From Macrostomum lignano (lineage: Eukaryota): a stretch of 64,000 nucleotides of DNA. Shown one piece after another: positions 7,801 through 59,580 of this stretch. Location: contig NIVC01000501.1 in assembly GCA_002269645.1 (NCBI GenBank), positions 158,037-222,036 of the forward strand, read 5' to 3'. The notes under the pieces are model-generated. The model had not been told where the DNA came from. It was given only the letters and a program-made list of their open reading frames with translations, and ran no database searches. A program made the position numbers and the translations under genes. How positions within the stretch are numbered: position 1 is the first letter of the stretch; each line of letters opens with the position of its first letter.

Positions 7801-9658
7801 AATCCCACACTAGATCCCATCTTGATATGGGAGCTTAATCCCACACTACATATAGATCCCATATTGATATGGGACCTTAATCCCACACTACATCCCATCT
7901 TGATATGGGAGCTTAATCCCACACTTAATCACATATTGATATTGGAGCTTAATCCCACACTAGATCCCATCTTGATATGGGAGCTTAATCCCACACTAGA
8001 TCCCATCTTGATATGGGAGCTTAATCCCACACTAGATCCCATCTTGATATGGGAGCTTAATCCCACACTAGATCCCATCTTGATATGGGAGCTTAATCCC
8101 ACACTACATATAGATCCCATATTGATATGGGAGCTTAATCCCACACTAGATCCCATCTTGATATGGGAGCTTAATCCCACCCTACATATAGATCCCATAT
8201 TGATATGGGAGCTTAATCCCACACTAGATCCCATATTGATATGGTAGCTTAATCCCACACTTAATCACATCTTGATATGGAAGCTTAATCCCATATTGTT
8301 ATACTGAAAAAAATTAAACTTTTCTCCTAGAACTGGGAAGACGGTGCCAAGCTATTTGAGCAGCTTCTTATTGACGCCGAATGGCCAACTAACAACGGCT
8401 TGTGGCTCTGGATGTCTGGCAGCGCTTTCTTTCAGGCATTCGGCTGCGCCTATTCGCCTGTGGTTGCCGGCCGGAAGCTTGATCCGCAGGTAAGCTTGGT
8501 GTGATTTTCATTCATTCAATTTTATCCATTGAAAGCGTTACCGGCGTGACAAAAATCGCTAAAATTAAAGTCATTGCAAAAAATCACTGGTGACTCTAGC
8601 GACTTTGGGGCGACTCTAATGACTTTTTAATGGCTCAAACGACTGTAATCCAGCGGAGAGACGACTGTTCAGTCACGAGCGCATCATTTGACTTGTAGAA
8701 TCGTAAAATAGCGGCGAAAAGTCGTCCAGGCGCTTAACTTGCTGCTAACTCAAGTAGACTAGATAGGGTTGTTATACTAGAAATCAGCGTCCCCGTTGGG
8801 GAGCCAACGAGGAATTAAATACATTTTTTAATAAACTACGTACATGTAGCTTATGACTTCATCCTTGACATCTTAGCCTCCCCTCGCATCAGCCTTGACA
8901 TCTCAACAATCCCCCCGTACATGTAAGCCTTGACTCTCACATCTGACATGACGCTTTATGTCACTTTTTTCAATATGCTTATATCTTTGACATGACGTTT
9001 ATTTTATTTTTTCGTGACGCTTCTTTCATACGAAACTCGGTGATTCTACAGCAACTCTAGCACGCCTCAGATACGACTGTACAGCCCCAGAGTCATTGCA
9101 GAAGCGCCTTTCAGCGTTGCAGATAAAAAAACGCCTCAAATATTCGGCAAAACTAATCGTGTATTTCAGGGCGACTACATCCGTCACTACCTGCCGCAGC
9201 TGGCCCGCCTGCCAACCCGCTACCTGCACGAGCCCTGGCTGGCTCCACCGGCTGTACAAGAAGCCGCCGGCTGCATCATCGGTCGGCACTATCCGGCCCC
9301 GATGCTGCCAGATCTCGACGAGGCCGCCGAAAGTTGCGCCAGTCGTCTGCGGGCGGTCTACGCTGCACTGCTGACTCAGTCGGGGACTCCAACTGCGGCT
9401 TCTGCTGCTGCTGCTGCTACTGCTGCTGGCGGTTCCACTCTCGCTTCGATGCAGCCGCCGCCACCACCGCCGCCGTTGACTTCGAGGCCGTCGCGACCGC
9501 CGTTCTCTCAAGCATCGTCGTCGTCGTCGACATCATCGGCTTTGGCGCCGCCGCATTTGACTATGGCGACTGGGGTACAACAGCAGCATCAGCAGCACGC
9601 AGAAGACTTCGTGTTGGACATGCTGGCTTCACCAACTATCGATGATTCTATGGCTTAA
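4831..9658 (+). CDS. cry: Cryptochrome/photolyase family protein, mammalian-type (repressor-type CRY1/2-like), ~664 aa, 4 coding exons
   Basis: Exons 4831-5349, 6169-6996, 8331-8489, 9170-9658 (all GT-AG, phase 0, 1995 nt). Motifs HWFRRDLRLHDN, GGETEALARL, FGCLS, GELLWRE, RTGVPWIDAIMTQ, FLTRG, GDYIRHYLP, EPWLAP, C-terminal helix RLRAVYAAL and a long tail. Start could be 4831 or 4909. Confidence 0.93.
5436..5925. repeat. 29-bp minisatellite in cry intron 1 (GGGGTTTCGGGATTGAAGGTGAGGGACTC), ~16-17 copies
   Basis: Direct tandem units visible; explains the repetitive ORF 5380-5994. Confidence 0.95.
7072..8295. repeat. 36/42-bp minisatellite in cry intron 2 (GATATGGGAGCTTAATCCCACACTA[CATATA]GATCCCATCTT)
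   Basis: About 32 units of two length variants; explains the repetitive ORFs 7041-8258. Confidence 0.95.
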
Positions 9659-14300: not shown

Positions 14301-15174
14301 TCCTCAGTTGCTAAGCCAGCCTCCCAGATCCTCAGTTGCTAAGCCAGCCTCCCAGATCCTCAGTTGCTAAGCCAGCCTCCCAGATCCTCAGTTGCTAAGC
14401 CAGCCTCCCAGATCCTCAGTTGCTAAGCCAGCCTCCCAGATCCTCAGTTGCTAAGCCAGCCTCCCAGATCCTCAGTTGCTAAGCCAGTCTCCCAGATCCT
14501 CAGTTGCTGGGCCTTCTTATCAATGCCTCAGTTACCTAGTGCCAGCGTCAGTTGTAAAGCAGAGCACATTGCACTCTCTGCCAAGTCCTTACGCGGTTCA
14601 AACCGACCAGCCTGCCTCCCTGTCTTCAGAGAAAATCGGCTCCGATAACGTTGGCCACCGCCTGCTCAAAGGCATGGGTTGGTCGGGTGTCGGCGGCATC
14701 GGTAAGCGGCTTGAGGGTCGCGCTGAACCCGTCGCCAACGACGTCCGCATCGTCAGCCGGGCGGGTTTGGGCGCCGATTCTGCAAGCGGCGGCTCCGGCG
14801 CCACTGGCGCCGTTTCAGCCAGCTTCCAAACCGGCGTCGGCCGAGTCTTGCGCGATTTCCAACGCGATCCAACCGATCGCGACGATCTGTTCTTTGCGTC
14901 GGATTTCACCAACGAGGAGCGCCGATACGTGCAATCGCAGTGCCTCAGGCTGGGCCTGGCCAGCCGGTCCTATAGCGGCGACAATGACACCCGCTGTTTA
15001 GTTGTCAGCCGGAAGCGGAGCGCTAAAGAATTAGTAGAATTTGTGCGTAGAAATGGTGGCGCTACGGTTCGATATCGGCTAGCTGCGCCGGGTCTGTCGC
15101 GGGAAGCTGGAGATGAGGCTGGCAATGATGGCGATGGCGGCGGAGCTGGAGAGGCTACTGTCACCGCAGAATAG
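11343..15174 (+). CDS. NKRF: NF-kappa-B-repressing factor orthologue (XRN2-binding domain, dsRBD-like, G-patch, R3H-like), ~490 aa, 4 exons
   Basis: Exons 11343-11531 (GC donor), 12058-12151, 12671-13315, 14630-15174 = 1473 nt in frame. XTBD (EWKRRQAFL...RLVCLSHCYVN...GAVYP), dsRBD-like (FRCTILLDN...AETKQAAK), G-patch (IGSDNVGHRLLKGMGWSG...GRAEPV) and R3H-like (FTNEERRYVQ...LGLASRSY...LVVSRK), in NKRF domain order. The exon 4 acceptor has in-phase alternatives (14540/14546/14552). Confidence 0.88.
11673..11980 (+). mobile_element. tRNA-derived SINE with CORE-like central segment in NKRF intron 1
   Basis: A-box TGGCCCAGTGG, B-box-like GGTTCGATTTCC, then TGTGTCCTTGAGCAAGACACTTAAC (CORE-type motif) and an AT-rich TAA tail. 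Confidence 0.7.
13399..14510. repeat. 28-bp minisatellite in NKRF intron 3 (CTCCCAGATCCTCAGTTGCTAAGCCAGC), ~40 copies
   Basis: Direct tandem units with blocks of variants (GAGTGTCAG, CTGGGCC). Confidence 0.95.
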
Positions 15175-19410: not shown

Positions 19411-19959
19411 CCCACATAATAGTGCAATAAAAATAGTTTCGGTTATTAGCAAATGTTTACATAGTCGATTATTTATTTTCAGTCCAATGGTTGTAATATG
19501 TTTTTCGACCTTGCAATAAGTTTTTTTGAATCAGTATTTAATATCAATACCCATTCGGTTTATCGCAAAATTCTATTTTATTATCGAGTCGCTTTCGCCT
19601 TAATTGTTCGATTAATTTAGTAATTATGATTTTGTTTGTTTGTCCAAATCACTACTTGTGCAAGTATCAGATGCGCTTTTTATTGGCATATTAGCGGGAT
19701 TTATAGCGAACGCAATGCATTTTCACCTGCTGAGCATAAATTGTTGATTTTTTCAGCATAAGTATTACCATCAGTAGTCAGAGGAGACGTCATTCAACTA
19801 GTTTACTTGTCAGGCAGACACAAAAAATTTCTTTTATACTCGTACCTACATCTTGCTTTTTCTGTTGATAATCTTTGCTTGTTTTCTCAATTTTCTTATA
19901 TTGTTAAAATAATAAACACTCCTCCAACCCACTCAAAACATCCCTCTCCATTGAACACA

Positions 19960-21475
19960 TCCACCCCACTCCATAGTGTACACACCCTCCGCAGCCGGCC
20001 CCACCCCACTCCACAGTGTACACTCACCCTCCTCACCCAACTCCACAGCGTAAAAACACACTCCTCCCACCCCACTCCACAGTGTACATAACCTCCGCAG
20101 CCCGCCCCACCCCACTCCACAGTGTACACTCACCCTCCCCACCCCACTCCACAGTGTACACAACCTCCGCGGCCTGCCCCACCCCACTCCACAGTGTACA
20201 CAACCTCCGCAGCCCGCCCACCCCACTCCACAGTGTACACAACCTCCGCAGCCTGCACCACCCCACTCCACAGTGTACACAACCTCCGCAGCCTGCACCA
20301 TCCCACTCCACAGTGTACATTCACCCTCCCCACCCCACTCCACAGTGTACACAACCTCCGCAGCCTGCACCACCCCACTCCACAGTGTACACAACCTCCG
20401 CAGCCTGCACCACCCCACTCCACAGTGTACACAACCTCCGCAGCCTGCACCATCCCACTCCACAGTGTACATTCACCCTCCCCACCCCACTCCACAGTGT
20501 ACACAACCTCCGCAGCCTGCACCACCCCACTCCACAGTGTACACAACCTCCGCAGCCTGCACCACCCCACTCCACAGTGTACATTCACCCTCCCCACCCC
20601 ACTCCACAGTGTACACAACCTCCGCAGCCTGCACCACCCCACTCCACAGTGTACATTCACCCTCCCCACCCCACTCCACAGTGTACACAACCTCCGCAGC
20701 CTGCCCCACCCCACTCCACAGTGTACACAACCTCCGCAGCCCGCCCCACCCCACTCCACAGTGTACACAACCTCCGCAGCCTGCACCACCCCACTCCACA
20801 GTGTACACAACCTCCGCAGCCTGCACCACCCCACTCCACAGTGTACACAACCTCCGCAGCCTGCACCATCCCACTCCACAGTGTACATTCACCCTCCCCA
20901 CCCCACTCCACAGTGAACACAACCTCCGCAGCCTGCACCATCCCACTCCACAGTGTACACAACCTCCGCAGCCTGCACCACTCCACTCCACAGTGTACAC
21001 AACCTCCGCAGCCTGCACCACCCCACTCCACAGTGTACACAACCTCCGCAGCCTGCACCATCCCACTCCACAGTGTACATTCACCCTCCCCACCCCACTC
21101 CACAGTGTACACAACCTCCGCAGCCTGCACCACCCCACTCCACAGTGTACACAACCTCCGCAGCCTGCACCACCCCACTCCACAGTGTACACAACCTCCG
21201 CAGCCTGCACCACTCCACTCCACAGTGTACACAACCTCCGCAGCCTGCACCACCCCACTCCACAGTGTACACAACCTCCGCAGCCTGCACCACCCCACTC
21301 CACAGTGTACATTCACCCTCCCCACCCCACTCCACAGTGTACACAACCTCCGCAGCCTGCACCACCCCACTCCACAGTGTACATTCACCCTCCCCACCCC
21401 ACTCCACAGTGTACACAACCTCCTCAGCCTGCCCCACCCCAAAGTGTATACACCCCTCCCCAGCCTGCCCCACCC
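19960..21475. repeat. GTGTACA-core minisatellite (CCCCACTCCACAGTGTACACAACCTCCGCAGCCTGCACCA ~40 bp plus a shorter variant)
   Basis: Two alternating unit types; source of many overlapping repetitive ORFs. Confidence 0.95.
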
Positions 21476-22043
21476 TAATTCGCCATCAAAAATCGACTAT
21501 TTTTGTTTTCAAAAATGCGAAATGTTCGCGCACTTTATAGTCCTTAATTTCGCTGCTGATTAGTTTACGTCTCGTTACCTGCTGTGTGATAGTCTACATT
21601 TTTTAAGCATTATGCAGCAATTATTATTATCATATCTATAATCGATTGGCGTTGAGCGAGATGATTTATTAGCATATAACCCGCTTACAATTAGAGATAA
21701 ATTAGGTAGCACTATTTTGTTTAAAATTTAAATTCATGACAATTACAATTCGTTATTGTGTTTCTTGAAAAGTCTTATTTCAGCTAATTGCTACTGCTGT
21801 TGCTTTTGCCTACTTTACAGCTGAGCTTATTGAAGATCGACAATAGGAATAATTAGCTTATTAGTAAGCGAATGACCTGCTTTAGTTACTGCTTTGCGCG
21901 CCAAGCATTCGTGTTTTTGCTGTATTTTTCTAATGATCAATAAATGTTAATTTAAATATGACCCGCATATATATATTGTAGTTGTCCATTTTTTTAACAA
22001 TTAAGCAGTGTAATGTTTTAAATTCCTTTTGAGTTGGGTGGAC

Positions 22044-24167: not shown

Positions 24168-25566
24168 CTAGAAAGTGTTCTTCTTGCCAGTCGAGTCCAT
24201 CATGTTGATGCTGATCTCGTAGAACACGTAGGGATGATAGGCCTGCTGGGTGGGCATGAGGCCGGTCATCTCCGCGCCGCCCATTTCAACCGGGGTGCCG
24301 CCCATGTGGTCCAGGTAGCGATAGGTGCTGGCCAGGGTGTCGCGGAGCTTCTTGGCCGTCTTGCGGTTCGGCCGCATCAGCACGGGCTGAGGAAGGGATT
24401 TGGAATTTTTGGATTTGGGAATGGAATTTAAGTTTCAGGTCAGAGTGGGAATTTGAGGATTAAGACTCAAGTGGGATTTAAGGATCGAAAATCAAGTGGG
24501 ATTTGAGGATCGGGACTCAAGTGGGATTTAAGGAGCGGGACTTAAGTGGGATTTAAGAATCGGGACTCAAGTGGGATTTAAGGAGCGGGACTCAAGTGGG
24601 ATTTAAGAATCGGGACTCAAGTGGGATTTAGGGATCGGGATTTAAGTGGGATTTAAGGGTTAGGACTCAAATGGGATTTTAAGGATCGGGACTCAAATGG
24701 AATTTAAAGGTTGGGACTCAAGTGGGATTTAAGGGTCCGGGACTCAAGTGGGATTTAAGGGTCCGGGACTCAAGTGGGATTTAAGGGTCCGGGACTTAAG
24801 TGGGATTCGAGGATCGGTGGGAATCAAGTGGGATTTAAGGGTTGGGATTCACGTGGGATTTGAGGATCGGGAGTCGGGACTCAAGTGGGATTTCAAGATC
24901 GGGACTTAAGTGGGATTTAAGAATCGGGACTCAAGTGGGATTTAAGGAGCGGGACTCAAGTGGGATTTAAGAATCGGGAGTCAAGTGGGATTTAGGGATC
25001 GGGATTTAAGTGGGATTTAAGGGTTAGGACTCAAATGGGATTTTAAGGATCGGGACTCAAATAGAATTTAAAGGTTGGGACTCAAGTGGGATTTAAGGGT
25101 CCGGGACTCAAGTGGGATTCAAGGGTTGGGATTCACGTGGGATTTGAGGATCGGGACTCAATTGGGATTTCAGGATCGGGATTAAAGTGAGATTTGAGCT
25201 CCTGAGCATCAATCTCACCTGGAAATTAACCGGCAGGCCATATCGCAGCACGGACTCAACAAAAACTCGCAAAGCTTTGATGTGAACCCAGGCAATGAAC
25301 GACTCGGAGAAGTTGACGCTTAGCCAGCGAACCAGCGGCGCGTACTGGCGCTGCTTGTCGTCAGCCAGTCGGGCTCGCTCGTTTTTCGAATCCTGCAAGC
25401 TCTTCTCGTCGTAGACAAAATCGCGAACCATAAATTTGTTCTCTCGGCACTTGTGCTTGAAGTCATCTTGGCAACGGCGGAACAGGGTCACCGTCACCAG
25501 CATGTGGTCTGAGTCCTGCGGGTAGGGCGGGTGTGATTACTTAGTTTAGTTAGTTAGTTAGTTAGC

Positions 25567-25597
<31 letters not shown>

Positions 25598-26336
25598 ATA
25601 GTCAGTTAGTTAGTTAGTTAGTTACTTAGTTAGTTACTTGGTTACTTAGTTACTTAGTTAGTTAGTTAGCTAGTCAGTTAGCTTATTTAGCTACCTGAGT
25701 AACCAGCTGAGAGCTCCTCGGCACAACAAAGTCGGCCAGCCGCTCGTACTTCAGCCACCAATCGTTGGCGGAGGCCTGCGGCACCACAACCAACAAGGTG
25801 ATCAAGTAGTCGCTATCCAGCACAAAATGCTCGCGCTTAACCAAAGCTCCCAGATTCTTAGTCATCAAACTGCCTGTCTCTTTGCGATCCAATTGGCTCA
25901 AATTGTTCTTCAAGTCCAAATAGTTTTTCGCACGAGTCTTCAAATCTGCTTCGATTTTAGCCACCTGCCCAACAATGATCTCTGTTAGGCTGGGCAGCGG
26001 CTGCTTCGGCGGGTACTTGCCAGTCTCCCAGGTGAACCTGGTCAGGTAGGACTCGAGATCTAGTCCATTAACCTTCAAGCTCTCCTGCAGCTTAGTTTGA
26101 CCACCTTCGAGAACATCGCTTAGAACACTGACAACCCGTCTAGTTGTGGCCTCGCAGAATGTGTCGTGTTTAGCCAGTTCATCCGACAGGCCAACCAGCA
26201 CGTCCAAGGTGCCAACCTTCAGTTCTGGCGTGTTGAACTTCCAGTTCACCGACAATGTACTAGTGATGGCATTCAGCTTATCAAATGCTTGCTGGGGAGT
26301 TTTCTCGCCAGGCAGGGAGATTAGCCAGTAGTCCAT
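24168..26336 (-). CDS. ATP6V1C1: V-type proton ATPase subunit C, 385 aa, 3 exons
   Basis: Exons 26336-25695, 25515-25219, 24386-24168 (phase 0, 1158 nt). [92 protein letters not shown]. Confidence 0.97.
24440..25190. repeat. Degenerate ~24-28-bp minisatellite in V-ATPase C intron 2 (GGGACTCAAGTGGGATTTAAGG...)
   Basis: Direct tandem units filling most of the intron. Confidence 0.9.
25540..25682. repeat. (TTAG)n/(CTAA)n microsatellite in V-ATPase C intron 1
   Basis: Tetramer run filling most of the 179-bp intron. Confidence 0.9.
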
Positions 26337-27604: not shown

Positions 27605-28440
27605 ACAAGAACAACAATAACAAAATACGCGACCTCGCATGCACAGTCACAGTTAAAGCAGTGCATGTCAGATAGCACGCCGCAGAGCCTGGGAGCAAAT
27701 AAAGTCTGCTCTGTTGGCAGTGTTGGGCGCCCCAGCATTGCACAGCAGGCAGTCTACATATTGGCGGGTTTGGGCCTGACCCCGCTAAGTGAGTAGCAGG
27801 ATGTCCTGAACAGGTTGGGGGCAGTAGCCCTCGGCCCAGATCATGTGACCTGCCAGTTGAAGTTGCCACTGGTGCAGGATGATAGACGGACGCTGCAGCT
27901 TGGCCCAATCATACAGGGCCTTGGTCCCGACACTCTTGTCAGCTCAAAAGGCCACATGCCACATAGAGCAGCCCTGAGTGCGCCGAGTCCAGCTGCTACT
28001 CTAGCATAGCTGTCAGTGTCCACGTCTCAGTGTTATAGAGCAAGATGGATTTGACTACTGCCTGCCACAGCCAAGCCCTCTGGCAGTTGGGCAGCACTTC
28101 AGACTGGAGGATGGATTGGATCAAACAAATGGCTGCCCAGGCAAGTCCTCTGCGCCGCCAAAGATCTTCTTCCACATGGGCACTAGACTGCCAAGGTAGG
28201 TGAACCACTGGCAGCGTGCAAGCCTGGTTGTTTGCCTATCTGCACCGCAACACGTCAGGTCCACTGGGATGTCGGCCAGCACAATCAGCACCTCGGTCTT
28301 CAGCATTTTGATGATCAGACTGATGCTCAATGCCACCTCAACCAGCCCATCAATCTGGCGCTGGGCACCTTCAATGGATGAGGACAGGAGGGCAACGTCA
28401 TTGGTGTAGCCAAGCATGCTTAGATGCTATTTGCCGTGGT
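27605..28440 (-). mobile_element. Decayed non-LTR retrotransposon (LINE, RTE/CR1-like) 3' fragment, left part
   Basis: Minus-strand remnants LGYTNDVALLS (degenerate YADD box), FTYLGS, SILLYNTETWTLT, SQALRRAI*, then a TTG/TTA-rich tail. Contains stops and frameshifts. Confidence 0.8.
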
Positions 28441-29711
28441 CCAGGATGGAATTCTTGCACGAAAGTTGTTACGCGTTTGTGCGCGCTTGTCAAATTCGTG
28501 CGCGCTTGCGCGCTTGAAAGGGGCCTACGTGCGCGCTCTCATGAAAGGTATGTGCGCACTTGTGCGCGCGTGCGCGCTTGCGCGCGCGTGCGCGCTTGTG
28601 ACCCCTTGCGTGCATAAGTGCGCACATTTTTAAAAAAAATTGCAGAGATGTCCCTTCGACGAGTGAGAAAAAAACATCATTCATGTAAGTACAGTACATG
28701 TAATACCACATACAAATATACATGTAATGCATATTAATTTATAATTGTACGTATATGATCCGTCAAAATCCGACCCATTTTCGCCCCAATGTTATGTTTT
28801 TGCTTTTGAGGAAATTGAAACGTTTGATGCACCATTCGTAAGAACAAGTTTTTAATATTTTAAATACGGATTTGATTCTATGTTCGTTCAATATACCGTA
28901 AATTCCCAGCTTTATTAATTGGCCGTGTTGTCTGAACTCTTTCCTACATTTTCTCAGAGATTTTAAGAAAAAGTCACTACAGTCTTTAACAAATGCGAAA
29001 AGATGAATTTACTTTCTCATTTTTTTAATCTTTGCACAATTAACTGTTTTGAAATTTCACGTTAAACCATTTGCTTAACTTTTTTTCTAAGAAATACTAA
29101 TATTTTACGCGTACAATTTCTTTAGATTTGAAGTGACTATGCGAATGGCATTGCCAGCCATCGGTGATGGCAATTGGCAAACAATCAATATAGCGAGTTT
29201 AGTTTTCGAGTTTTATTGAAGGGCAACTGCAGTGCCTAAAATAAAAAGAATCGAACAATTTACACTTATAATTTGGACTAATTGGACTCAGACATTTTGT
29301 TTTTGTATAGGATTTCATAACTAAACTAGCCTACAGCCCTACTACACATAGGGCCATTAAGAATTAAGATTAAGATATTGGCTATTAAAAAGCTTTCAGT
29401 GTCAAGCATAAGCCATGAGGCAGGTCAAAGGTTTATACATTATGATTTGGAATTTATCATTTGATTTATACTTTTTATTTTTGTAATTTTTTTCAATACT
29501 ACACTGCAAGTCTGCAATACTATTTTAAAACTAAAAGCTATAGTGTTTATAAATAACTTATATATAGTTCCACTGTTTGTTTCAATAATACTAAAATAGT
29601 AATATTTATTAATACTAATAATAAGAAATAAAATCTTTTATTTTCAGATTATTTTTTAACTGATCTGCATCTTAGCATCTACAACATTCAATAAGACAAC
29701 ATCATATCATA

Positions 29712-32700
29712 ATGGCTTTCCTTGCTGTTGTGCCAGGGATTTGGACAATTGCCATTATTTCATATCTTATGATAACTGCCAAAGACACAATTGATATTGA
29801 AAATGAAATCCAGGCCCCACCAGAACCTAGTCCTACTGGCACTCCTTTGCTTTTGCAAAGAGCAACTGTTTCTGTTTTTACTGCTAGTCCAATTGACAAT
29901 AGCAGTGGTGCTGGATCCATTCCTAGGCCAGATTCACCTATCACTATTACTACTACCCCTTCTGTAAATCGAGAGGATGGACAAGCTTTTTCCTTTGGTT
30001 AGTTAAGATTATTTAACATTGAATATATAGTTTAAATAGGATGGTATATTTCAAACTTTTCAATTAAAGTAACTGCTATTCAAATTTCTTTTTTTAGAAT
30101 TATGGGGCCAAGATAAAGGTGCTGGTTCTAGTATGTCTTCAGGCCAGTCACAGCCACTAGGCCTTGCCTTTCAGGATAGAGGTCCTAACATTTTTATATG
30201 TAAGGAATGTTATCTACAAGGAAAGGTAAATTTGGTTCACTATTTCTAAATATTATTTATATATATTGTTTTCAATAGTTTGATTATTATAGTTGAAATA
30301 TTTTAGTTGAAGTACACTGTCTCTCAAAAGAGAGACAAGGATCGGCACACTGCGAGTAAATTCCACACTGCCAAAACTTGCAATTTGGTTAGGAATTCTT
30401 CCCAGGAGGCCATCTTGCTTGTTAGAGGTATGGCTTAAGTTTTTTTAGAAGTATAACTTCATCTGTTTTTTTGATCATTTCTATTTACTACTTCATAACT
30501 ATTTCACTTTCAGAACATGAAGCTGCTAAAACACATAGGACTTCAAAGAGATCTCATCCTGTTGCTGCACCAGATGAAAGAGAGACCATTTCATGTAATT
30601 TAAAGTGTTTCTTATGGCTTTTTACACATTTTACAATATGCTTTTAGAATGAGCAACACATTAATATAAAAGAAAAAATGAATTTTTAGCTTCTAGCGAT
30701 ACTGAGGCACCTCAGGCAAAGAAGACTCATTCTGAGGCTGATCGCGAAGAAAGTACTACTCTACCACCAACAAACTCTGGTGTAATAAACCCATCCTGTG
30801 CTGGTGACTGTGCCAATGCATTTTCCGATCTTGTTAAAAAACTGCCTAGTATGATAGGAGATATAGTTGAAAGAAAACTCGCCTTTGCCTTTGAGACATT
30901 AGGTAAGCCATCTGAGAATTCCAATCGAAGTCACAGCGCAAGTGTAACTAACAGCGAGTTTGTATTGGACTTGGAGAAGTGGATGACGCTAAACTCTATT
31001 GTAGACATAGCGCGGGAAGTCCCAGACATAGAATTATTTTTGAATGAAGAAGATGGACACTCTGTAGTAAGGTGTAAAACATGCTGGGAAGCTTTAGATA
31101 CTCGAAAGCTGAGTAAAATGTCTGTTTTTCAAGTGTCTCGTCACTATAGTGATAATTGCACATTGGGCACAGGTGTTTACATGAATCCCAGCGAAACTGA
31201 GTTGATTATAAAAGGGACTTCTAATAAAAAAGATACACAGTTTTGGCGAAATTTCAAGAGCAAACTGCGAGGGCATCTTTTAGGGTCATCAAATAATTCA
31301 CAGGGACGGCAGCATGCGCTCTCTGTAAAAAAACAAAAGGATCAAGCAGAAGAAGACAAACTATCTCACGAAATTGCTAAACGCTTAGTCCGCTCAGCAA
31401 TCCAAACTATTAGATCCAAGGCTGGTGCTGTACACTATGAAAATCAAGTAACTTTTCTAGAACTCAATGGCTGTCAAATTGGAAATCGGGGGCACGGAAG
31501 AAAACAGCTTTCAATTATTATTAATGCAGCTAACGAATGGATCAATGATGAAAACCGGAAGCTTCTTTTGACGCCATTGGAGTCTACAGGTCTCCCTCCA
31601 CATTTCATGGGAATTGTTGATAAAGCGACACAGACCCGCGAGACAAACCAGGCTATCTTGCTTGCAACTATAAGCCGAGGGGAAAGAGTCGCATTCCCAG
31701 TTGGTGCCCCATGTGTTTATTTTGTACAAAATGAAGACGTCTGCGAGGAGAACTCCAGTGCTTCAGTAAATAGTGATGTTTCTGATTCTGGTGAATCGAA
31801 TGAATCAGATTCTGACACAAGCACGAGTTAGGACTTAGATCGCGTAGTAGTTACTAGGGGGAGTCTGGCTGAGCTAGCGCAGCTTATCTTTCGCACGATT
31901 CAAGATGAATTAAAACTGGGGGAAAAGGACCTCTTGCGGTATTGTGGTACAGCAGCTGATGGCCAGTATCAACCGGCAATGTTTGCAAATGAAGTAACCC
32001 GCTTGTCAGGGCGTAGCAATATCGCGGACAGTTCTACATTTCAACCTGTAATATGGGATGTATCGCACTTACTTAATTTAGCGGTGTTAGATGTTCGCGA
32101 GTCAAAGTACGGTAAACCTGCGGCAGATTGCTTAACATTGTTTATTGAAAGGGCCAACGAGTTTAACCATTTAATGGGAAGGGGCAAAAACCATACTTTA
32201 ATGTCAAAAGTGGCGTCCAAAATGAAGGAAAAAGTGTCTGTACCAATACCATATGCAACACAGCGATTTACAAGCTCATCTGTTAAGCAGTGGGTCAAAA
32301 TTGAAAGAGCTTACAGTCTGTATGCAGCAACTTTTCGTCGCATTCACGATGAAGATGAAGACTTTCCCCTCCAATATAGGGTTTTGGGAGCAGACTTTGC
32401 TACCGATCTGTGTCTGCTACTAGATGTGTTTCAACCACTAGTTGAAATGATGGAGCTGGCCCAGGGATTGCAATTCAATCACTGGAAAATTGTTTCATGG
32501 GGAATCGCCTTCTACAAATGATGGATAGAAAGTGTCGTCCATTATATGACAAGCACCGAGCTGACATTGAAGGTATGAGCTTTAAGAAGGTGCGGCTTCT
32601 AGAGGGCTGGCATGTAATTGGCGAAGAATATGTCGGGCAAGAAGCAGAAAGTAGTCGAGGAAGACGTCGGAGGTGTAATAAGAAGAAAGTATACCTTTGG

Positions 32701-33648
32701 GAGGAGAGAACAACTAATGATGCAGTCAGAGAGGTCGAAGTCGTTTCCAGCTCTCTCCGTCAAAGTGTGGCTAATCGATTAAATAAGGGAACCTCAGCAT
32801 GCTCAAATATCTTAGCCAAGTTTATGGACTTTGAGCAGCTACTATACCTTTTATGTGGTTCCCGTGAAACTGCTTCCAATGGTACAGCCAAGCCTATTCG
32901 GCAGTGCATAAACTTTTCTGGCTTCATGGAGGCTGGTGAGCCAGAGTTTTGTTCGTTTTTTAATTATGTGGTTTCACTCCCATATATTTCTGAGGTGGCT
33001 GAATCAGACGAATTATTTTCAGAACTGATACTTGGAAACCATAGCTACGTACATGTAAAGTACAAGAATGTTATTGAATCCCTCTTTTGGGGTCACCTTG
33101 CTCCGTATGGGATACAGTGCCTTGTATGTTCCAAGTCAAAAAAGCCAATTAAGGGCCAAATCATTAATTCCATAAAAATTGAAGAGAATTCGCGCCTCCA
33201 GCAGGTTTTTAAAGTTGAAACTGATGTACGCTGTTATGACAACTGTATTCTGGATGAGGCAGCACTTATAAAACAATTATACACAGTTCAACCAGTCTTT
33301 GAAGAAGCTGGTCGAGCTGTGTGCATTCTTCTTGACGTTGCACTGAACACAGGTGGTGGGGAGGCAATTGCTGAAAGTTTCTACGGCGTAATGCGTAGCC
33401 AACGCATTATGGGAAGGCAAAAAAATAAAGCCTTGCAGTTGCGAACGAAGATCGATTGGTGCCTCCCGCCCATCAGCTCTCTAATCGAACGTTCAGTCAA
33501 CGAAATCGCCTCTAAGTATTTAAAGATTGCGGCATGTCCACTTGCATCCGATCCCCGTACCATCCGCGGATATTTAAATAGTGGGTTTAGAAGCGCAGTT
33601 CAGCGCCGAAAAAATTGTGTTAAACCACGGTTGGGCCACCTCGTGTAA
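29712..33648 (+). pseudogene. Spliced hAT-like transposase gene (~1,190 aa) with one nonsense codon and one frameshift
   Basis: Phase-consistent exons 29712(or 29676)-29997, 30098-30225, 30307-30427, 30514-30594, 30690-33648. C2H2 finger CKEC...H..SKFH, TTF-like RCKTC...WRNFK..L.GH...H, putative DDE motifs GIVDKAT / AADGQ / AIAESFY, DxxH motif WDVSHLLNL. TAG at 31829-31831 (frame continues); -1 shift at ~32498. Confidence 0.82.
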
Positions 33649-34021
33649 TGCCGACTGTAACGTCTGACTAGCATTTATACGCAAGTTGAAATGAACCACA
33701 ATGCATGTACAATGACTTGTTAAGATGTTTGACTCAATAAATCATTCGCTATATAATGCGTAAACAATTCAGAACTCTCCAGGCAATAACCACAAATGGA
33801 CAAGCACACCAGCACGCTTAGTGCAACAAAACTTATATTTGTCTTGAATTTTAGAATGAGGGGACGCTAATAATATGCCTAGCGTACATGAAGTGCGGGG
33901 CAGATAGAAAAACAAGAGTGGGGGGTTTGTACTTGTACCTAGGCATGCAGGCCACAGAGAAAAGGACAGAAATGAAGATGGGACGACGCAGCACAGAGAG
34001 GGTTGAATGTACATCTAGCTA

Positions 34022-34269
34022 CAGGGGCGGATTTGGGGGGCGTCCCTAAAATAAGTACTTTTGACGGAACATAGTGCACCCCCAGAAAAAGCCAAAGTTT
34101 GCGCCCCCCCCCCCTAAACTTGATTTTTTCGCCCCGAAACACCATTTTTTGCGCCCTAAGCTAATATCTTATCGCCCCCTACATGCATTTTTAAGCCCCT
34201 AAATTGGCACCCTTATACTCGTGTTGGCGCCCAAACTTAGACCGCCCCCAAAAAATTGATCTGCCACTG
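34022..34269. mobile_element. 248-bp hAT-type MITE nested in the right arm of the large transposon
   Basis: Imperfect TIRs CAGGGGCGGAT / CAGTGGCAGAT. Flanks TCTAGCTA (34014-34021) vs TATAGCTA (34270-34277), a 7/8 TSD. Confidence 0.7.
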
Positions 34270-34804
34270 TATAGCTACATGTAACTTGCAGGAAGGGCAA
34301 AGAAAAATCATTATTTTAATTAAACATGTACATGAAACGCAACATTTCGATTTGAATTTTGCGACAATATACATCAACCCAACTATACTAAATCCAACTA
34401 TACTAAACGTCTAATATTATACTAAAAACATAACTGTACTAAAATTGTCATTTTTGCAGGTGTTTCTCTTTTTTTAATTAATTAAAAGTTATTATTAAAA
34501 CAAAAATATACACAGTTGCATACATGTACTCAAAAATATACAAAGCAATATTTTTTATGAATGTAAAACGTGTCATTATCTTTTTTGTTGCCTTACTCGT
34601 AATTGCATAATCGAAAAGCAAAAATAGTAGCAAATGTACACAAAATACTTCGATTGTTAAAATTTGATAAAATTTGTATACAACATGGTTATGTGCGCTC
34701 AAGTTCTCTTATTTTTAGCTGGCGACCCTGGCGTGCGCACTTGCGCGCTGCTCCAAAAACGTGCGCGCGCGTTTTCCTTCCTCTGAGCAAGAATTCCATC
34801 CTGG

Positions 34805-34910
34805 GCCGTGGTGGCAACCGATACATCTGCATAGCAGGCAGCCATTATTAGCCAAAAGGAATAAGGTCCAAAGTACCCAGTCTAGCAGCACTATGTAATA
34901 CTCCTTTAAG
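34805..34910 (-). mobile_element. Right-hand remainder of the same LINE RT fragment split by the transposon
   Basis: After removing the transposon and one TSD, the minus frame reads IVLLDWVLWTL...HHGK*HLSMLGYTND, i.e. the RT segment directly N-terminal to the YADD box. Confidence 0.7.
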
Positions 34911-36703: not shown

Positions 36704-39700
36704 ATGGCGTCAACCCTTGACAGCATTCGCCCGCCGCCTATATTGCCTCCACTTCGGGGCATCTATGCTGGCAAATATAAGGACAGAAATCCCGATTTGA
36801 AAACTGTAAGCATTGATATCACATATTATAAAAATTATAATATTCAGCTAAACAGCACAATCATATCAAATAAACTTAATACGATTCTAGGCTGGAATAG
36901 TCAGCGATGTTGGAGGAGACACTGCAGCTACCGCTACCAAAGAAATGGAACGTGTAAGTAGCTAATTAGTAGTATATTTCGCCTAGAACTGTCTGTGTAC
37001 ATAAATATTGTTTTAAACGAAATCCACAGGCCGAGTCGCCGGAACCTACAAAAAAGTTTCACCGAACTTTTCGCTCGGAGCCCGGCGAACGAATCGTGTT
37101 TTATGGCAAAGCCAGCGATCCGCAACTGCGCTGGGCGGAGCGCATGACTCACGGAATCAAGTATCCGAAAGGGTGAGTGGCTGAGTGCTGAGCACGGAGA
37201 GATAACGTAATACACGTTGCTTTTTTTCTATCCTCTCTACCATACGCTTATTGCATCGGATTAGGTGTGACTTGGGTTAACACACCTGGTTAGACAGGAC
37301 TATCACACCTGGTTGTACAGGATTATCCACCTGATTAGACGGGATTATCCACTTGATTAGACTGGATTATCGCACCTGATTAGATAGGAATATTGCTCCT
37401 GGTTGGATGGGATTATCACACCTGGTTAGACAGGATTATCGCAAGACAGGATTATCGCACCTGGTTAGACATGATTATCGCACCTAGTTGAACAGGATTA
37501 TCGCACCTAGTTAGACATTATTATCGCACCTGATTAAACAAGATTATCGTACCCCAACTAAAACTCTGTTTCAAACTAAAACTCGCCGCAGCGAGGGCGC
37601 GGGCGGTGTCCTGAACCCGACGCCGCTAACCTTCTACCAGCAGCGATTCATGGACCGCCTTGAAGCCGCTCAGGTGAACGCCAAGAAGCGACCGCTCGGC
37701 CGGTGCCCCGACGGCCGAGAGATGGGCCTGCTGCCGCAGAATCTGGACAAAGACAACACCACGTTCGGCATCACTGTGGAAAAGAGTGAGTCAACTGTAT
37801 AAGTGTATTAACGCTCTTGGGACTAAGACTTCCACGTCATAGGGCCATGCTTCGTGAATCTCATCATATTGAAGATTAGCAATTTCCAATAATCCAGGAT
37901 TCCATACTTTCATATCTGAATAGCCCAGATTTCTTGCTACTAGATAAAAAATTCGAGATTCCCAAAGTAAATATCACAAAATCCCAAACTAAAGATCCTC
38001 AAAATCCTAAACTAAAGATCCGAAAATCCGAAAGTAAAGATCACTAAATCTCTAAGTAAAAATCCCAAATTCCAAAAGCTAAGATCCCAAAAATCCCAAA
38101 GTACAGATCCCGAAAATCCGAAAGTAAAGGTGAGAAAATTCCAAACTAAAGATCCTCAAAATCCCATACTATAAATCCTCAAAATCCCATACTATAAATC
38201 CTCAAAATCCCATACTATAAATCCTCAATATCCCATACTATAAATCCTCAAATCCCATACTATAAATCCTCAAAATCCCTTACTATAAGATCCTCAGAAT
38301 CCCAAAGTAAATATCCCAAAATCAAAAAATCCCGCCAAACCGACCCACGCGCCCAGTCGGTTCAGCTGGCGAGCTGCTCAACCCGTCTGCCACGCCAATC
38401 GAACTGGCCACGGAGGCGGCCAGCGACGCGAACACCTACCTGGTGTCGCACAAGGCCCTGCTGGCCGGAGAACAGGCCAGCCGCGGCTACAATTGGCGAC
38501 TAAAAGACGCCGGCGGCGCCAAACGCTGGGGCAAGCCGACGCCGCACGACAACACCGGGGGCGGCACGCGCAAGTGCATGAGCTGGATAGGGGACGAAGC
38601 GGCGGCCAGGCGGGAGGCTCTGGTAGACAAACGGCTGGATGATTTTCGAGAGCGAACTCAGCATCAGTTGGGCAAGAATCTGGATCCGTGAGTTCCATAT
38701 TCATAAATTGATCCCCTATTCATAAATTGAGCCCATATTCATAGATTGATCCCATATTCATAAATTCATCTCATATTCAAATGGATTTCAAATTTAGATT
38801 AAGACCAAGTACTATTCATGTCATATATCAGTATTCCATTGATCGCATATATTCATATAAATGTGCATATATTTAAATACCATTGATCGTATTGATCTGA
38901 TTATTGATCCCATTGATCATTAATCAGTATTCCATTGATCGCATATATTCATATAAATGTGCATATATTTATCCCAAAAATATTCCACAATAAATGGTTC
39001 TCTAAGTACGTCAAAAATGAACTCTACCTGCGTTTCTCTTAACTTCCCTATGTGCAGCATCAAGGACACGATGAAGGTGCCGCCGGACCACACTTTCGGC
39101 GTCCTGCACAAGCCCGATCCCTACGGAGTCGGCGACCTGTTGCACGGTCGGGCGCCCAAGCATTTCCTTCGCGGCGAGGACCGGCGCCGTGCTCTGGTCG
39201 CCGCGCTGCGCACCCAACTGAAAACTATGAACTACGAGCGCTTCAAAGATCTTGAAGACGCGTTCCGATTCTACGACAAGTCCGGCTCCGGCAAGTTGAG
39301 CGCTGACGACATTCGCGCCGCCTGCCGAGAGATGAGCGTGCCGCTGGACGACTCGCTGCTCGAACAACTTATCGACTTCTGCGACGTCAACGGCGATGGG
39401 CTAATCGACTATCAGGAGTTTGCCAACTTCCTCAACTGGAGAGATATTAGTGAGTATGATGAGGTTTTAGTATGGAAAGACTAGCAATCTGCGCCCCGGT
39501 TGAGGCCGAGGCAACAAAGAAAGAAATGGGAATTTTCGAATAAACAACATACAGGTCTTGAGCTAGTATATATTAATTGCAATCGTTGATTTCTTTGGTA
39601 TGGAATTTGACTAGCCCCCCGTCCTTAATTGGAGTGGTGATTTTAGTATAGAAGACTAGCCAACCCCCCCATTGAAGTGGTGATTTTAGTACAGAAAGAT

Positions 39701-46296: not shown

Positions 46297-47295
46297 GTTG
46301 TTAGACAGGGTAGGGTGGCACCTGTTAGACAGGGTAGGGTGGCACCTGTTAGACAGGGTAAGGTGGCACCTGTTGGACAGGGTAGGGTGGCACCTGTTAG
46401 ACAGGGTAGGGTGGTACCTGTTAGACAGGGTAGGGTGGCACCTGTTAGACAGGGTAGGGTGGTACCTGTTAGACAGGGTAGGGTGGCACCTGTTAGACAG
46501 GGTAGGGTGGCACCTGTTAGACAGGGTAGGGTGGCACCTGTTAGACAGGGTAGGGTGGCACCTGTTAGACAGGGTAGGGTGGCATCTGTTAGACAGGGTA
46601 GGGTGGCACCTGTTAGACAGGGTAAGGTGGCACCTGTTGGACAGGGTAGGGTGGCACCTGTTAGACAGGGTAGGGTGGCACCTGTTAGACAGGGTAGGGT
46701 GGTACCTGTTGGACAGGGTAGGGTGGCACCTGTTAGACAGGGTAGGGTGGCACCTGTTAGACAGGGTAGGGTGGCACCTGTTAGACAGGGTAGGGTGGCA
46801 CCTGTTAGACAGGGTAGGGTGGCACCTGTTAGACAGGGTAGGGTGGCACCTGTTAGACAGGGTAGGGTGGCACCTGTTAGACAGGGTAGGGTGGCACCTG
46901 TTAGACAGGGTAGGATGGCACCTGTTAGACAGGGTAGGGTGGCATCTGTTAGACAGGGTAGGGTGGCACCTGTTAGACAGGGTAGGGTGGCACCTGTTAG
47001 ACAGGGTAGGGTGGCATCTGTTAGACAGGGTAGGGTGGCATCTGTTAGACAGGGTAGGGTGGCACCTGTTAGACAGGGTAGGGTGGCATCTGTTAGACAG
47101 GGTAGGGTGGCATCTGTTAGACAGGGTAGGGTGGCACCTGTTAGACAGGGTAGGGTGGCATCTGTTAGACAGGGTAGGGTGGCATCTGTTAGACAGGGTA
47201 GGGTGGCACCTGTTAGACAGGGTAGGGTGGCATCTGTTAGACAGGGTAGGGTGGCATCTGTTAGACAGGGTAGGGTGGCACCTGTTAGACAGGGT
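46297..47295. repeat. 24-bp G-rich minisatellite (GTTAGACAGGGTAGGGTGGCACCT), ~41 copies
   Basis: Highly homogeneous tandem array; explains ORFs 46204-47349. Confidence 0.97.

Positions 47296-48186: not shown

Positions 48187-59580
<11,394 letters not shown>

What the first reader, a model, noticed from the sequence alone, without database searches (positions are those of the whole stretch)
28441..34804. Full-length 6.4-kb DNA transposon with atypical CCA termini and a divergent hAT-like transposase (candidate new clade)
Seen: perfect 18-bp TIRs beginning CCAGG, a perfect 8-bp TSD GCCGTGGT, GCGCGC subterminal repeats and a ~1,190-aa protein. Established: 8-bp TSDs typify hAT and P; hAT ends usually start YAG, and hAT transposases carry CxxH and RW motifs, whereas DxxH is typical of P/Kolobok-type enzymes. 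Inference: the motif order here is hAT-like (GIVDKAT, AADGQ, AIAESFY), but it has DxxH (WDVSH), RF rather than RW (TQRF), no THAP domain and CCA ends, a mix that may define an unnamed subgroup. Perfect TIRs and TSD imply a recent insertion.
Basis: partly seen in the sequence, partly recalled or inferred. Interest (0 to 1): 0.8.

Follow-up and report, generated by a model that had tools for sequence, protein, structure and literature searches.

The report
Divergent hAT-like transposon in a flatworm
This is a real, recently inserted 6.4-kb cut-and-paste DNA transposon of the flatworm Macrostomum lignano whose large transposase is predicted to fold like the hAT enzyme Hermes but matches no curated protein-family (Pfam) model, and it represents a widespread, apparently undescribed hAT-related lineage with its own conserved end sequence.

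Summary
Perfect 18-bp TIRs (CCAGGATGGAATTCTTGC) lie at 28441-28458 and 34787-34804. They are flanked by a perfect 8-bp TSD (GCCGTGGT). Subterminal TGCGCGC repeats occur about 10 times on the left and 3 times on the right. A five-exon gene matches M. lignano models of 1,103 and 1,191 aa at 99%.

This copy is disabled by a nonsense codon (31829-31831) and a 1-bp deletion (about 32498). Four other independent insertions in the same genome are 99.7-99.9% identical. Each has its own perfect 8-bp TSD, and two keep an intact main exon.

The protein matches no Pfam model. It has 614 distant relatives (E<=1e-3), named ones from a crustacean, a tunicate and a jellyfish.

Two AlphaFold models match only the Hermes hAT transposase in the PDB (probability 1.00). 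A profile comparison with hAT puts the D, D, C/DxxH and RW/RF motifs in register (E 3e-4).

Two further lineages, about 27% identical in protein, also have 8-bp TSDs and ends starting CCAGGGTG.

Verdict: a deep hAT-related lineage that works like hAT. It departs in DxxH, RF, an extra terminal C, no detectable hATC domain and doubled protein size. I rate it a new variant of a known kind. Repbase and Dfam could not be checked.

The parts
28433..28440 (.). Left copy of the 8-bp target site duplication, GCCGTGGT
   Evidence: Read directly. Identical to 34805-34812.
28441..28458 (+). Left terminal inverted repeat, CCAGGATGGAATTCTTGC
   Evidence: Identical in five other copies. The first 14 nt are 11/14 identical to the TIRs of two distant lineages.
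28479..28626 (+). Left subterminal repeat cluster, about 10 copies of TGCGC[G/A]C. Presumed transposase (zinc-finger) binding sites.
   Evidence: Searches give counts against shuffles. The binding role is inferred by analogy with the Hermes STR/BED and Ac AAACGG repeats (PMC10368747, PMC3260210).
29712..29997 (+). Exon 1 of the 1,191-aa gene model (absent from the 1,103-aa model). Low-complexity N-terminus of uncertain reality.
   Evidence: tblastn with P0163; splice reconstruction.
30098..30225 (+). Exon 2. Holds the CxxC half of the first N-terminal zinc-finger-like motif (FICKECYLQGK).
30307..30427 (+). Exon 3. Holds the H-x5-H half of the first zinc-finger-like motif.
30514..30594 (+). Exon 4, a basic linker.
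30690..33648 (+). Exon 5. It holds the conserved CxxC...H...H module, the RNase H-like DDE core (D, D, DxxH, RF), a large insertion domain and the E helix (AIAESFY). In this copy it is broken.
31829..31831 (+). Premature stop TAA (CAA, Gln, in intact copies)
   Evidence: Alignment with the L001 copy shows a C>T change at 31829. Same frame on both sides.
32497..32499 (+). Site of a 1-bp deletion (a G is missing) that shifts the reading frame
34733..34768 (+). Right subterminal repeats, 3 copies of the TGCGC[G/A]C motif in the same genomic orientation as those at the left end
34787..34804 (-). Right terminal inverted repeat
34805..34812 (.). Right copy of the 8-bp target site duplication, GCCGTGGT

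Best explanation
The interval is one copy of a young, low-copy family of cut-and-paste DNA transposons in Macrostomum lignano. The family belongs to a deep, hAT-related lineage.

Shown:
- The element is 6,364 bp long with perfect 18-bp TIRs.
- It carries asymmetric subterminal TGCGCGC repeats.
- Insertion duplicates 8 bp of target.
- It carries a five-exon gene for a transposase of about 1,100-1,190 aa.
- The predicted protein has an RNase H-like core. D428 follows beta1, D541 follows beta4, and W-D574-x-x-H577 follows beta5. R643-F644 comes next, then a roughly 370-aa insertion domain, and E1013 lies on the following helix (P0001 numbering).
- Among solved structures the predicted fold matches only the Hermes hAT transposase.

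Inferred by analogy with Hermes and Ac:
- The N-terminal Cys/His modules bind the subterminal repeats and bring the ends together.
- The DDE site nicks at the element ends and resolves the break through a hairpin on the flanking DNA. The conserved aromatic F644 would take the place of Hermes W319.
- The freed 3'-OH ends attack the target 8 bp apart.

The window copy has lost its reading frame (one nonsense codon and one frameshift) but keeps perfect ends. It could therefore move only with transposase supplied by intact sister copies such as those in L001 and L002.
For: - TIR, TSD and repeats.
- Five independent M. lignano insertions with different perfect 8-bp TSDs: GCCGTGGT, TGGCCATC, GCACTATG, GCGAATAT, CTGCTCAG.
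- Copies are 99.69-99.89% identical, and two have an intact 986-aa main exon.
- Family size: 614 proteins at E<=1e-3 and 230 at E<=1e-10 among 1.84 billion representatives. Named members come from Hyalella azteca, Styela clava and Sanderia malayensis.
- Conserved residues are listed.
- AlphaFold models: full length pLDDT 75 and pTM 0.68; core pLDDT 83 and pTM 0.82.
- Foldseek against the PDB: ranks 1-12 are all Hermes in both searches. Probability 1.00, E from 2e-4 to 3e-2, target-normalised TM 0.46-0.59, about 650-770 aligned columns. The next hits have E>0.4.
- hhalign of the family against a 26-member hAT profile: E 2.9e-4 over 257 columns, with D/D/H/RW(F)/S motifs in register.
- Two more lineages have CCAGGGTGCATTCC... 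TIRs, 8-bp TSDs (CCTAGGAA, ATTGCATC, GTTGAATG, CATGTTTG) and the same left-heavy subterminal repeat layout.
- From position 2 the ends read CAGGATG / CAGGGTG, close to the Ac end (C/T)AGGGATGAAA (PMC3260210).
Against: - No hAT Pfam model (hATC PF05699 or the other hAT-associated models precomputed for the Hermes relatives) is hit by any of 30 members, even at E<=10.
- The profile-profile probability is only 40.5%, and the C-terminal E motif was not aligned to Hermes E572.
- A profile search of PDB sequences found nothing.
- The structures are predictions, with about 8% sequence identity to Hermes and RMSD of about 8-13 A (up to about 25 A for two chains).
- The catalytic triad assignment rests on conservation and predicted secondary structure, not on inspected 3D geometry.
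- The nine TSDs fit neither the Ac-type nTnnnnAn (PMC10368747) nor the Buster-type nnnTAnnn (recalled from memory) target pattern.
- No excision footprint, empty site or polymorphism was observed, so current activity is inferred only from copy identity and intact ORFs.
Confidence: 0.8

Rival explanations
1. It is a separate superfamily, a sister of hAT within the C/DxxH group (hAT, P, Kolobok, MuDR, Dada), rather than a clade inside hAT. The mechanism would still be DDE cut-and-paste with an 8-bp stagger, but the Hermes-like features would be shared ancestral traits.
For: - No hAT Pfam model is hit.
- hhalign probability is only 40%.
- The protein is about twice the size of Hermes (612 aa), with extra beta-hairpin elements in the insertion domain.
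- It has DxxH and RF instead of CxxH and RW.
- The lineage has its own conserved tip with an extra C.
- There is no hAT-type target consensus among the nine TSDs.
Against: - Hermes is the only significant structural match, and the alignment covers nearly the whole Hermes chain, not just the RNase H core.
- The signature motifs align in register with hAT.
- TSD length, TIR length, the CAGG(G)(A)TG-type end and the subterminal repeats are all hAT hallmarks (PMC3942097, PMC3260210, PMC10368747).
Confidence: 0.2
2. It is a relative of the P-element / THAP9 superfamily, which also makes 8-bp TSDs and has D(2)H.
For: - The DxxH motif and the 8-bp TSD fit (PMC3706591).
- The E-helix motif ESFYGVMRSQ resembles P-element EHFFGSMRSRGG. 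This was the best local hhalign match to the P transposase sequence, which was verified against 6p5a.
- The TSDs are rather GC-rich.
Against: - That hhalign match is not significant (E 0.086, probability 0.7%, 32 columns).
- No THAP or P-element Pfam model is hit.
- The solved P transposase (6p5a/6pe2) is absent from the top 50 Foldseek hits of both models, while Hermes fills ranks 1-12.
- The ends do not resemble the P termini (CATGATG, from memory).
- The comparison was uneven, because only a single P sequence and not a P profile was available.
Confidence: 0.04
3. It is an already named hAT subgroup in Repbase or Dfam. The mechanism would be the same and nothing would be new beyond a new species record.
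For: - Repbase and Dfam hold many hAT sub-classes that are poorly covered by Pfam (my own knowledge).
- The family is widespread, so curators may well have met it.
Against: - All named relatives are 'uncharacterized' or 'hypothetical'.
- Full-text searches found no description.
- The M. lignano gene models survived an annotation step that removed transcripts overlapping classified repeats (PMC5730564). This suggests the 2017 Repbase-based classifier did not recognise the element.
Confidence: 0.35
4. It is a Zisupton/KDZ, Mutator-like or Kolobok element.
For: - Zisupton also makes 8-bp TSDs (PMC12730594).
- One distant M. lignano relative (P0025) is labelled SWIM-type domain-containing.
Against: - No KDZ, MULE or SWIM Pfam model is hit by the 30 members.
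- Kolobok makes TTAA TSDs (from memory); PMC3706591 says only that these superfamilies generate TSDs of 4 to 10 bp.
- The predicted fold matches Hermes across its length.
Confidence: 0.02

Closest known systems
Hermes (Musca domestica), hAT superfamily, Ac group
   Same: - 8-bp TSD and short TIRs (17 bp against 18 bp).
- Asymmetric short subterminal repeats.
- An N-terminal Cys/His DNA-binding module.
- A DDE RNase H core interrupted by a large insertion domain after beta5.
- D, D, xxH, R-aromatic and S motifs in the same order and register.
- It is the only significant PDB structural match.
   Different: - About 8% sequence identity.
- The protein is about 1,100-1,190 aa against 612 aa.
- D replaces C in CxxH, and F replaces W in RW.
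- No hATC or BED Pfam match.
- The element tip has an extra C (CCAGG against CAGAG).
- No nTnnnnAn target preference in nine TSDs.
- The element is 6.4 kb against about 3 kb.
Ac/Ds (maize), hAT superfamily
   Same: - 8-bp TSD.
- The end sequence (C/T)AGGGATGAAA resembles CAGGATGGAAT / CAGGGTGCATT, read from position 2 of this family's ends.
- Multiple short subterminal repeats lie within about 200 bp of the ends (PMC3260210).
   Different: - This family has an extra 5' C.
- The repeat motif differs (TGCGCGC or GGCGTA against AAACGG).
- The Ac transposase (807 aa) is recognised by hAT Pfam models (from memory), whereas this one is not.
Drosophila P element / THAP9 (P superfamily)
   Same: - 8-bp TSD.
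- DxxH after the second D.
- A similar short motif around the catalytic E (E-x-F-[FY]-G-x-M-R-S).
   Different: - No THAP domain.
- No significant profile or structural match.
- The ends differ (from memory, P has 31-bp TIRs starting CATGATG).
- The P insertion domain binds GTP (from memory), and nothing comparable was detected here.

Membership tests
hAT superfamily | 8-bp target site duplication | tested here: met
   Nine independent insertions in three lineages all have perfect 8-bp TSDs.
hAT superfamily | Short TIRs, 10-25 bp (PMC3942097) | tested here: met
   18 bp in M. lignano, 14 bp in lineage 2 and 18 bp in lineage 3.
hAT superfamily | Element tips begin YAG (5'-YARNG; the consensus is from memory; the Ac end (C/T)AGGGATGAAA is verified in PMC3260210) | tested here: not met
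   All copies begin CCAGG. A hAT-like CAGG(G)(A)TG starts only at position 2. The TSD boundaries fix the extra C inside the element.
hAT superfamily | Short subterminal repeats in the terminal ~200 bp, arranged asymmetrically | tested here: met
   TGCGCGC occurs 10 times left and 3 times right. GGCGTA occurs 6 times left and 3 times right in lineage 2. Binding by the transposase was not tested.
hAT superfamily | Hermes-type fold: RNase H-like DDE core with a large insertion domain between beta5 and the E helix | tested here: met
   Two AlphaFold models. Foldseek ranks 1-12 are Hermes only, probability 1.00. This rests on predicted structures, not experimental ones.
hAT superfamily | Sequence homology to hAT transposases, with D, D, CxxH, RW and E blocks in order | tested here: inconclusive
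   hhalign against the hAT profile gave E 2.9e-4 and probability 40.5%. The D, D, H and R-aromatic blocks are in register, but the E block was not aligned. HMM searches of the PDB found nothing.
hAT superfamily | CxxH motif after the second D | tested here: not met
   The family has W-D-x-x-H. D is in 84% of members and H in 82%. DxxH is the variant reported for the C/DxxH group as a whole (PMC3706591).
hAT superfamily | RW motif (Hermes R318-W319) | tested here: not met
   R643 is in 91% of members. Position 644 is F in 86%, so it stays aromatic but is not W.
hAT superfamily | C-terminal hAT dimerisation domain (Pfam PF05699) | tested here: not met
   No hit in any of 30 members at E<=10. In contrast, 40 of the 57 Hermes relatives listed carry PF05699, and most of those lacking it are partial sequences.
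hAT superfamily | N-terminal BED zinc finger | tested here: inconclusive
   A conserved C246-x2-C249...H313...H326 module exists. It aligns at low confidence with the Hermes BED CxxC/H. There is no zf-BED Pfam hit. zf-C2H2_12 (SPIN-DOC type) hits three relatives weakly.
hAT superfamily | Phylogenetic placement among the Ac, Buster and Tip groups | not testable with these tools
   No Repbase or Dfam reference sets are available. Only Ac-group relatives of Hermes could be fetched.
P superfamily | N-terminal THAP domain and P/THAP9 transposase domains | tested here: not met
   No such Pfam hits. hhalign to the verified P transposase gave E 0.086. 6p5a is absent from the Foldseek top 50.
P superfamily | 8-bp TSD and D(2)H motif | tested here: met
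   hAT shares the TSD length, so this does not discriminate.
Zisupton / KDZ | KDZ-type transposase (a Pfam KDZ model exists, from memory); 8-bp TSD (PMC12730594) | tested here: not met
   The TSD length fits, but no KDZ Pfam model is hit and the fold is Hermes-like.
Kolobok / MuDR | TTAA TSD (Kolobok); 9-10 bp TSD, long TIRs and a MULE domain (MuDR). These features are from memory. | tested here: not met
   TSDs are 8 bp and of varied sequence. There are no MULE or THAP Pfam hits.

The most novel reading that the evidence does not exclude
This would be a previously undescribed, animal-wide deep lineage of hAT-related transposons, possibly of superfamily or major-group rank. Its marks are 5'-CCAGGRTG tips, 8-bp TSDs, left-heavy subterminal repeats and a transposase of about 1,000-1,200 aa with D-D-DxxH-RF-E. 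Intact, transcribed and probably still mobile copies would exist in the transgenic model flatworm Macrostomum lignano.
Probability: 0.45. Interest if true: 0.7.

Novelty: new variant of a known kind. Interest (0 to 1): 0.6.

Why it matters
- **Diversity of hAT-type enzymes.** It extends the known range. The Hermes-like architecture persists although the CxxH cysteine, the RW tryptophan and the recognisable hATC domain have all changed. This makes it a natural test of which hAT features are really needed for hairpin-mediated excision.

- **Annotation.** At least 614 proteins (E<=1e-3) match this family. All those for which a source name could be looked up are labelled 'uncharacterized' or 'hypothetical', no Pfam model matches them, and the M. 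lignano copies were kept as host genes in that genome's core annotation. A profile for this family would reclassify them and improve repeat masking.

- **Tool potential.** M. lignano is a regeneration model in which heterologous transposon transgenesis has worked poorly (PMC5730564). An endogenous element with perfect ends and intact sister copies is both a candidate tool and a possible source of insertional instability in laboratory lines.

Tried and rejected
- **Pfam.** Scans of the window exons and of 30 family members found no transposase model.
- **PDB sequence searches.** phmmer and a profile hmmsearch found nothing.
- **Word-indexed homologue search.** With the protein, and then with the family alignment, it returned only the M. 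lignano protein itself, so one search was effectively wasted.
- **Single-sequence hhalign.** Comparison to Hermes or to the P transposase was uninformative. Only the hAT profile gave a meaningful alignment.
- **Ends of two relatives.** I could not define element ends for P0049 (the contigs L006 and L007 are the same locus, with no flanking inverted repeat). The same was true of Hyalella P0002 (no flanking inverted repeat by blastn). These may be decayed, domesticated, or have TIRs too short to detect.
- **Empty site.** A search among the sequences in hand found no match. The M. lignano assembly itself cannot be searched with these tools.
- **Alternative boundary.** I considered reading the element as CAGG...CCTG and rejected it, because the flanks then no longer form a direct repeat.
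- **Other superfamilies.** Zisupton/KDZ, MuDR and Kolobok were considered and rejected on TSD, Pfam and fold.

Full report
**1. What is in the sequence**

The 18-mer CCAGGATGGAATTCTTGC occurs exactly twice in the 64-kb window. One copy is at 28441-28458 on the + strand and one at 34787-34804 on the - strand. With up to three mismatches allowed, 0.02 matches are expected by chance.

The eight bases outside each end are identical: GCCGTGGT at 28433-28440 and at 34805-34812. Moving the element boundary inward by one base destroys this repeat, so the element really starts CC and ends GG.

Inside the left end, GTGCGCGC occurs six times between 28479 and 28595, and once near the right end. The whole window is expected to hold 0.7. 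The looser motif TGCGC[G/A]C occurs ten times in the first 190 bp and three times in the last 75 bp, always in the same genomic orientation.

**2. The gene, and the state of this copy**

The + strand carries a long reading frame from 30665 to 33645. It is interrupted by one in-frame TAA (31829-31831) and one frameshift near 32498.

A search of 5.8 billion proteins returned a single hit at 99% identity. It is a hypothetical protein of Macrostomum lignano (PAA71545.1, 1,103 aa), which identifies the source genome.

tblastn and a splice reconstruction give five GT-AG exons: 29712-29997, 30098-30225, 30307-30427, 30514-30594 and 30690-33648. These reproduce the 1,191-aa model PAA79914.1.

An intact sister copy (L001) differs from the window element by 18 substitutions and 7 indel columns over 6.37 kb. 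Two of those differences disable the window copy: a CAA>TAA change at 31829 and a missing G at about 32498. The element is therefore structurally complete but cannot make its own transposase.

**3. Other copies**

Contigs encoding the cluster members gave four further independent insertions in assembly GCA_002269645.1. One of them is present on two redundant contigs.

- All have the same perfect 18-bp TIRs.
- Each has its own perfect 8-bp TSD: TGGCCATC, GCACTATG, GCGAATAT and CTGCTCAG.
- Their flanks are unrelated to each other.
- Pairwise identity is 99.69-99.89%.
- L001 and L002 keep an uninterrupted 986-aa main exon. The others carry frameshifts.

This is the signature of a young, low-copy family that may still be mobile.

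The gene models come from a transcriptome-guided annotation that discarded transcripts overlapping classified repeats (PMC5730564). This suggests the element is transcribed and that it was not recognised as a repeat.

**4. What the protein is**

Pfam finds nothing in the window exons, in P0001, or in any of 30 family members, even at E<=10. The only exception is a weak SPIN-DOC-type zinc-finger match in three relatives. HMM searches of PDB sequences are also empty.

An exhaustive HMMER scan of 1.84 billion representatives shows a large family. There are 614 proteins at E<=1e-3 and 230 at E<=1e-10, at 25-35% identity. The named ones come from an amphipod, a tunicate and a jellyfish, and all are labelled 'uncharacterized'.

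Family-wide conservation, in P0001 numbering, picks out:

- C246, C249, H313 and H326;
- D428 (GIVDKAT);
- D541 (ADGQY);
- W573-D574-x-x-H577;
- R643-F644 and S647;
- a D686/D690/D696/Q709/W716 block;
- D1000, G1007 and E1013 (AIAESFY).

**5. Fold**

AlphaFold2 with the family alignment gave a full-length model with pLDDT 75 and pTM 0.68. A core model covering aa 395-1080 had pLDDT 83 and pTM 0.82.

The secondary-structure order is that of an RNase H-like transposase:

- beta1, ending at D428;
- beta2 and beta3;
- a disordered acidic insert, then alpha1;
- beta4, ending at D541;
- alpha2, then beta5 (W573-D574);
- a helix carrying H577;
- a roughly 370-residue, mostly helical insertion domain;
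- the helix carrying E1013.

Foldseek against 350,542 PDB chains returned, for both models, twelve Hermes hAT transposase chains at ranks 1-12. Probability was 1.00, E ranged from 2e-4 to 3e-2, target-normalised TM was 0.46-0.59, and about 650-770 columns were aligned. Nothing else had E below 0.4. The P-element transposase, RAG1 and Transib were not in the top 50, apart from one RAG chain at E 1.8.

**6. Profile comparison**

I confirmed my recalled Hermes and P-element sequences against PDB entries. I then fetched 57 Hermes relatives and aligned 26 of them.

hhalign of the new family against this hAT profile gave E 2.9e-4 and probability 40.5% over 257 columns. The pairings were D428 with D180, D541 with D248, H577 with H268 (D574 lies where Hermes has C265), R643-F644 with R318-W319, and S647 with S321. 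The alignment runs on into the first helices of the insertion domain.

With a looser threshold, the conserved CxxC (246/249) falls on the CxxC of the Hermes BED finger. The E block was not aligned.

Against the single P-element sequence, only the E-helix motif aligned, and not significantly (E 0.086). That comparison is weaker by design, because no P profile could be built.

**7. The ends are a lineage trait**

Two more lineages were recovered from metagenome assemblies of unidentified eukaryotes. Their proteins are 52% identical to each other and about 27% identical to the M. lignano protein. Two independent copies of each defined the element limits.

- Lineage 2 (L010 and L011, about 5.5 kb) ends in CCAGGGTGCATTCC, with TSDs CCTAGGAA and ATTGCATC.
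- Lineage 3 (L012 and L013, about 6.2 kb) ends in CCAGGGTGCATTCCATGT, with TSDs GTTGAATG and CATGTTTG.

Eleven of the first 14 terminal bases match the M. lignano TIR.

Lineage 2 also has a short subterminal repeat (GGCGTA), six times on the left and three times on the right, in one orientation. This is the same layout as TGCGCGC in M. lignano.

In total, nine insertions in three lineages share 8-bp TSDs and 5'-CCAGGRTG tips. From position 2 the ends read CAGGATG or CAGGGTG, close to the Ac end (C/T)AGGGATGAAA (PMC3260210). The tips are thus hAT-like with one extra C.

**8. How it most likely works**

Shown: the element structure, the 8-bp duplication, and the conserved acidic triad candidates on a predicted Hermes-like scaffold.

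Inferred from Hermes and Ac (PMC10368747, PMC3260210):

- The N-terminal Cys/His modules read the subterminal repeats. These are more numerous at the left end, as in Hermes.
- The transposase synapses the two ends.
- The DDE site cuts and forms hairpins on the flanking DNA, with F644 in the role of Hermes W319.
- The 3'-OH ends integrate 8 bp apart.

The window copy would need transposase supplied in trans.

**9. Classification and novelty**

The element works like a hAT element and is related to hAT. Several features used to recognise hAT were tested and not met:

- the CxxH cysteine;
- the RW tryptophan;
- the Pfam hATC domain;
- the YAG tip;
- the hAT target patterns.

I therefore do not file it as an ordinary hAT member. 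It is a deep hAT-related lineage, either a new major group of hAT or a sister lineage.

P, Kolobok, MuDR and Zisupton/KDZ are rejected on domain content, TSD or fold.

I could not query Repbase or Dfam, and I could not build a tree that includes the Buster and Tip groups. The lineage may therefore already sit in a curated library under a hAT sub-label; I put that at about one in three. Full-text searches found no description of it.

**10. Verdict**

I rate it a new variant of a known kind, of moderate-to-good interest to transposon biologists and to users of the M. lignano model.

Noticed in passing
window 1-64000, for example 7064-8293, 13399-14508, 20067-21441, 46299-47295, 52588-53998, 55853-56695: The window is crowded with long tandem arrays. 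TRF reports 51 rows at score >=200, with units of 4-170 bp and up to about 150 copies. This fits the simple- and tandem-repeat-rich M. lignano genome. Several arrays create long spurious ORFs on both strands, for example at 19933-21563.
   Followed up: partly
window 25108-26336 (-): There are two exons of a V-ATPase subunit C gene (Pfam PF03223, E 2.5e-74 and 2.6e-43), about 2 kb upstream of the insertion. An EF-hand protein exon lies at 38957-39484 (+). The transposon sits between these host genes.
   Followed up: partly
L003 4817-11199 and L004 84-6466: The same insertion (TSD GCGAATAT, same flanks, 2 substitutions) appears on two contigs of the assembly. This is consistent with the documented redundancy and extra chromosomes of the DV1 line. 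In L003 it lies within the span of a Myb/CDC5-like gene model on the opposite strand, so it is probably intronic.
   Followed up: partly
M. lignano annotation: PAA71545.1, PAA79914.1, PAA48345.1, PAA53737.1, PAA55831.1, PAA82038.1: Copies of this transposon are annotated as ordinary host genes (BOX15_Mlig019669g1-g6, Mlig007445g1). The truncated models start or stop at the copies' frameshifts. The annotation pipeline removed transcripts overlapping classified repeats, so the element evidently escaped repeat classification.
   Followed up: partly
P0001 residues 466-502 (window about 31730-31840): A disordered Ser/Asp/Glu-rich insert (EENSSASVNSDVSDSGESNESDSDTSTS) lies between beta3 and alpha1 of the catalytic core. 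It is gapped against the family consensus in the hhalign output. The window copy's nonsense codon falls at its end.
   Followed up: no
P0025 / P0170 (UniRef A0A1I8FTV9, A0A1I8IA18) and P0024 (Sanderia): More distant family members are fused in gene models to SWIM, HECT or protein-kinase fragments. These are probably chimeric predictions across TE insertions. It also hints at a second, older family of this lineage in M. lignano.
   Followed up: no
L006 6543-10211 / L007 (P0049 cluster) and L008 (Hyalella azteca P0002): An intronless 1,222-aa relative was recovered on several metagenome contigs, of which the two read are the same locus, and a multi-exon Hyalella relative was also found. Neither shows detectable flanking inverted repeats. 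They could be decayed copies, domesticated genes, or have very short TIRs.
   Followed up: partly
L012 and L013 flanks; L009-L011 flanks: The unidentified hosts of lineages 2 and 3 are TE-rich. Neighbours include piggyBac-like (DDE_Tnp_1_7), Harbinger-like (DDE_Tnp_4), Tc3-type HTH and reverse-transcriptase genes, a weak DUF4371 (hAT-related) hit, and Pox_A32-like and rva_4 hits. The host organisms were not identified.
   Followed up: no
TSDs of nine insertions (window, L001, L002, L003, L005, L010, L011, L012, L013): Several TSDs contain short palindromes: TGGCCA, CCTAGG, TGCA, CTG..CAG. None fits the nTnnnnAn or nnnTAnnn hAT target patterns. The sample is too small to call a preference.
   Followed up: no
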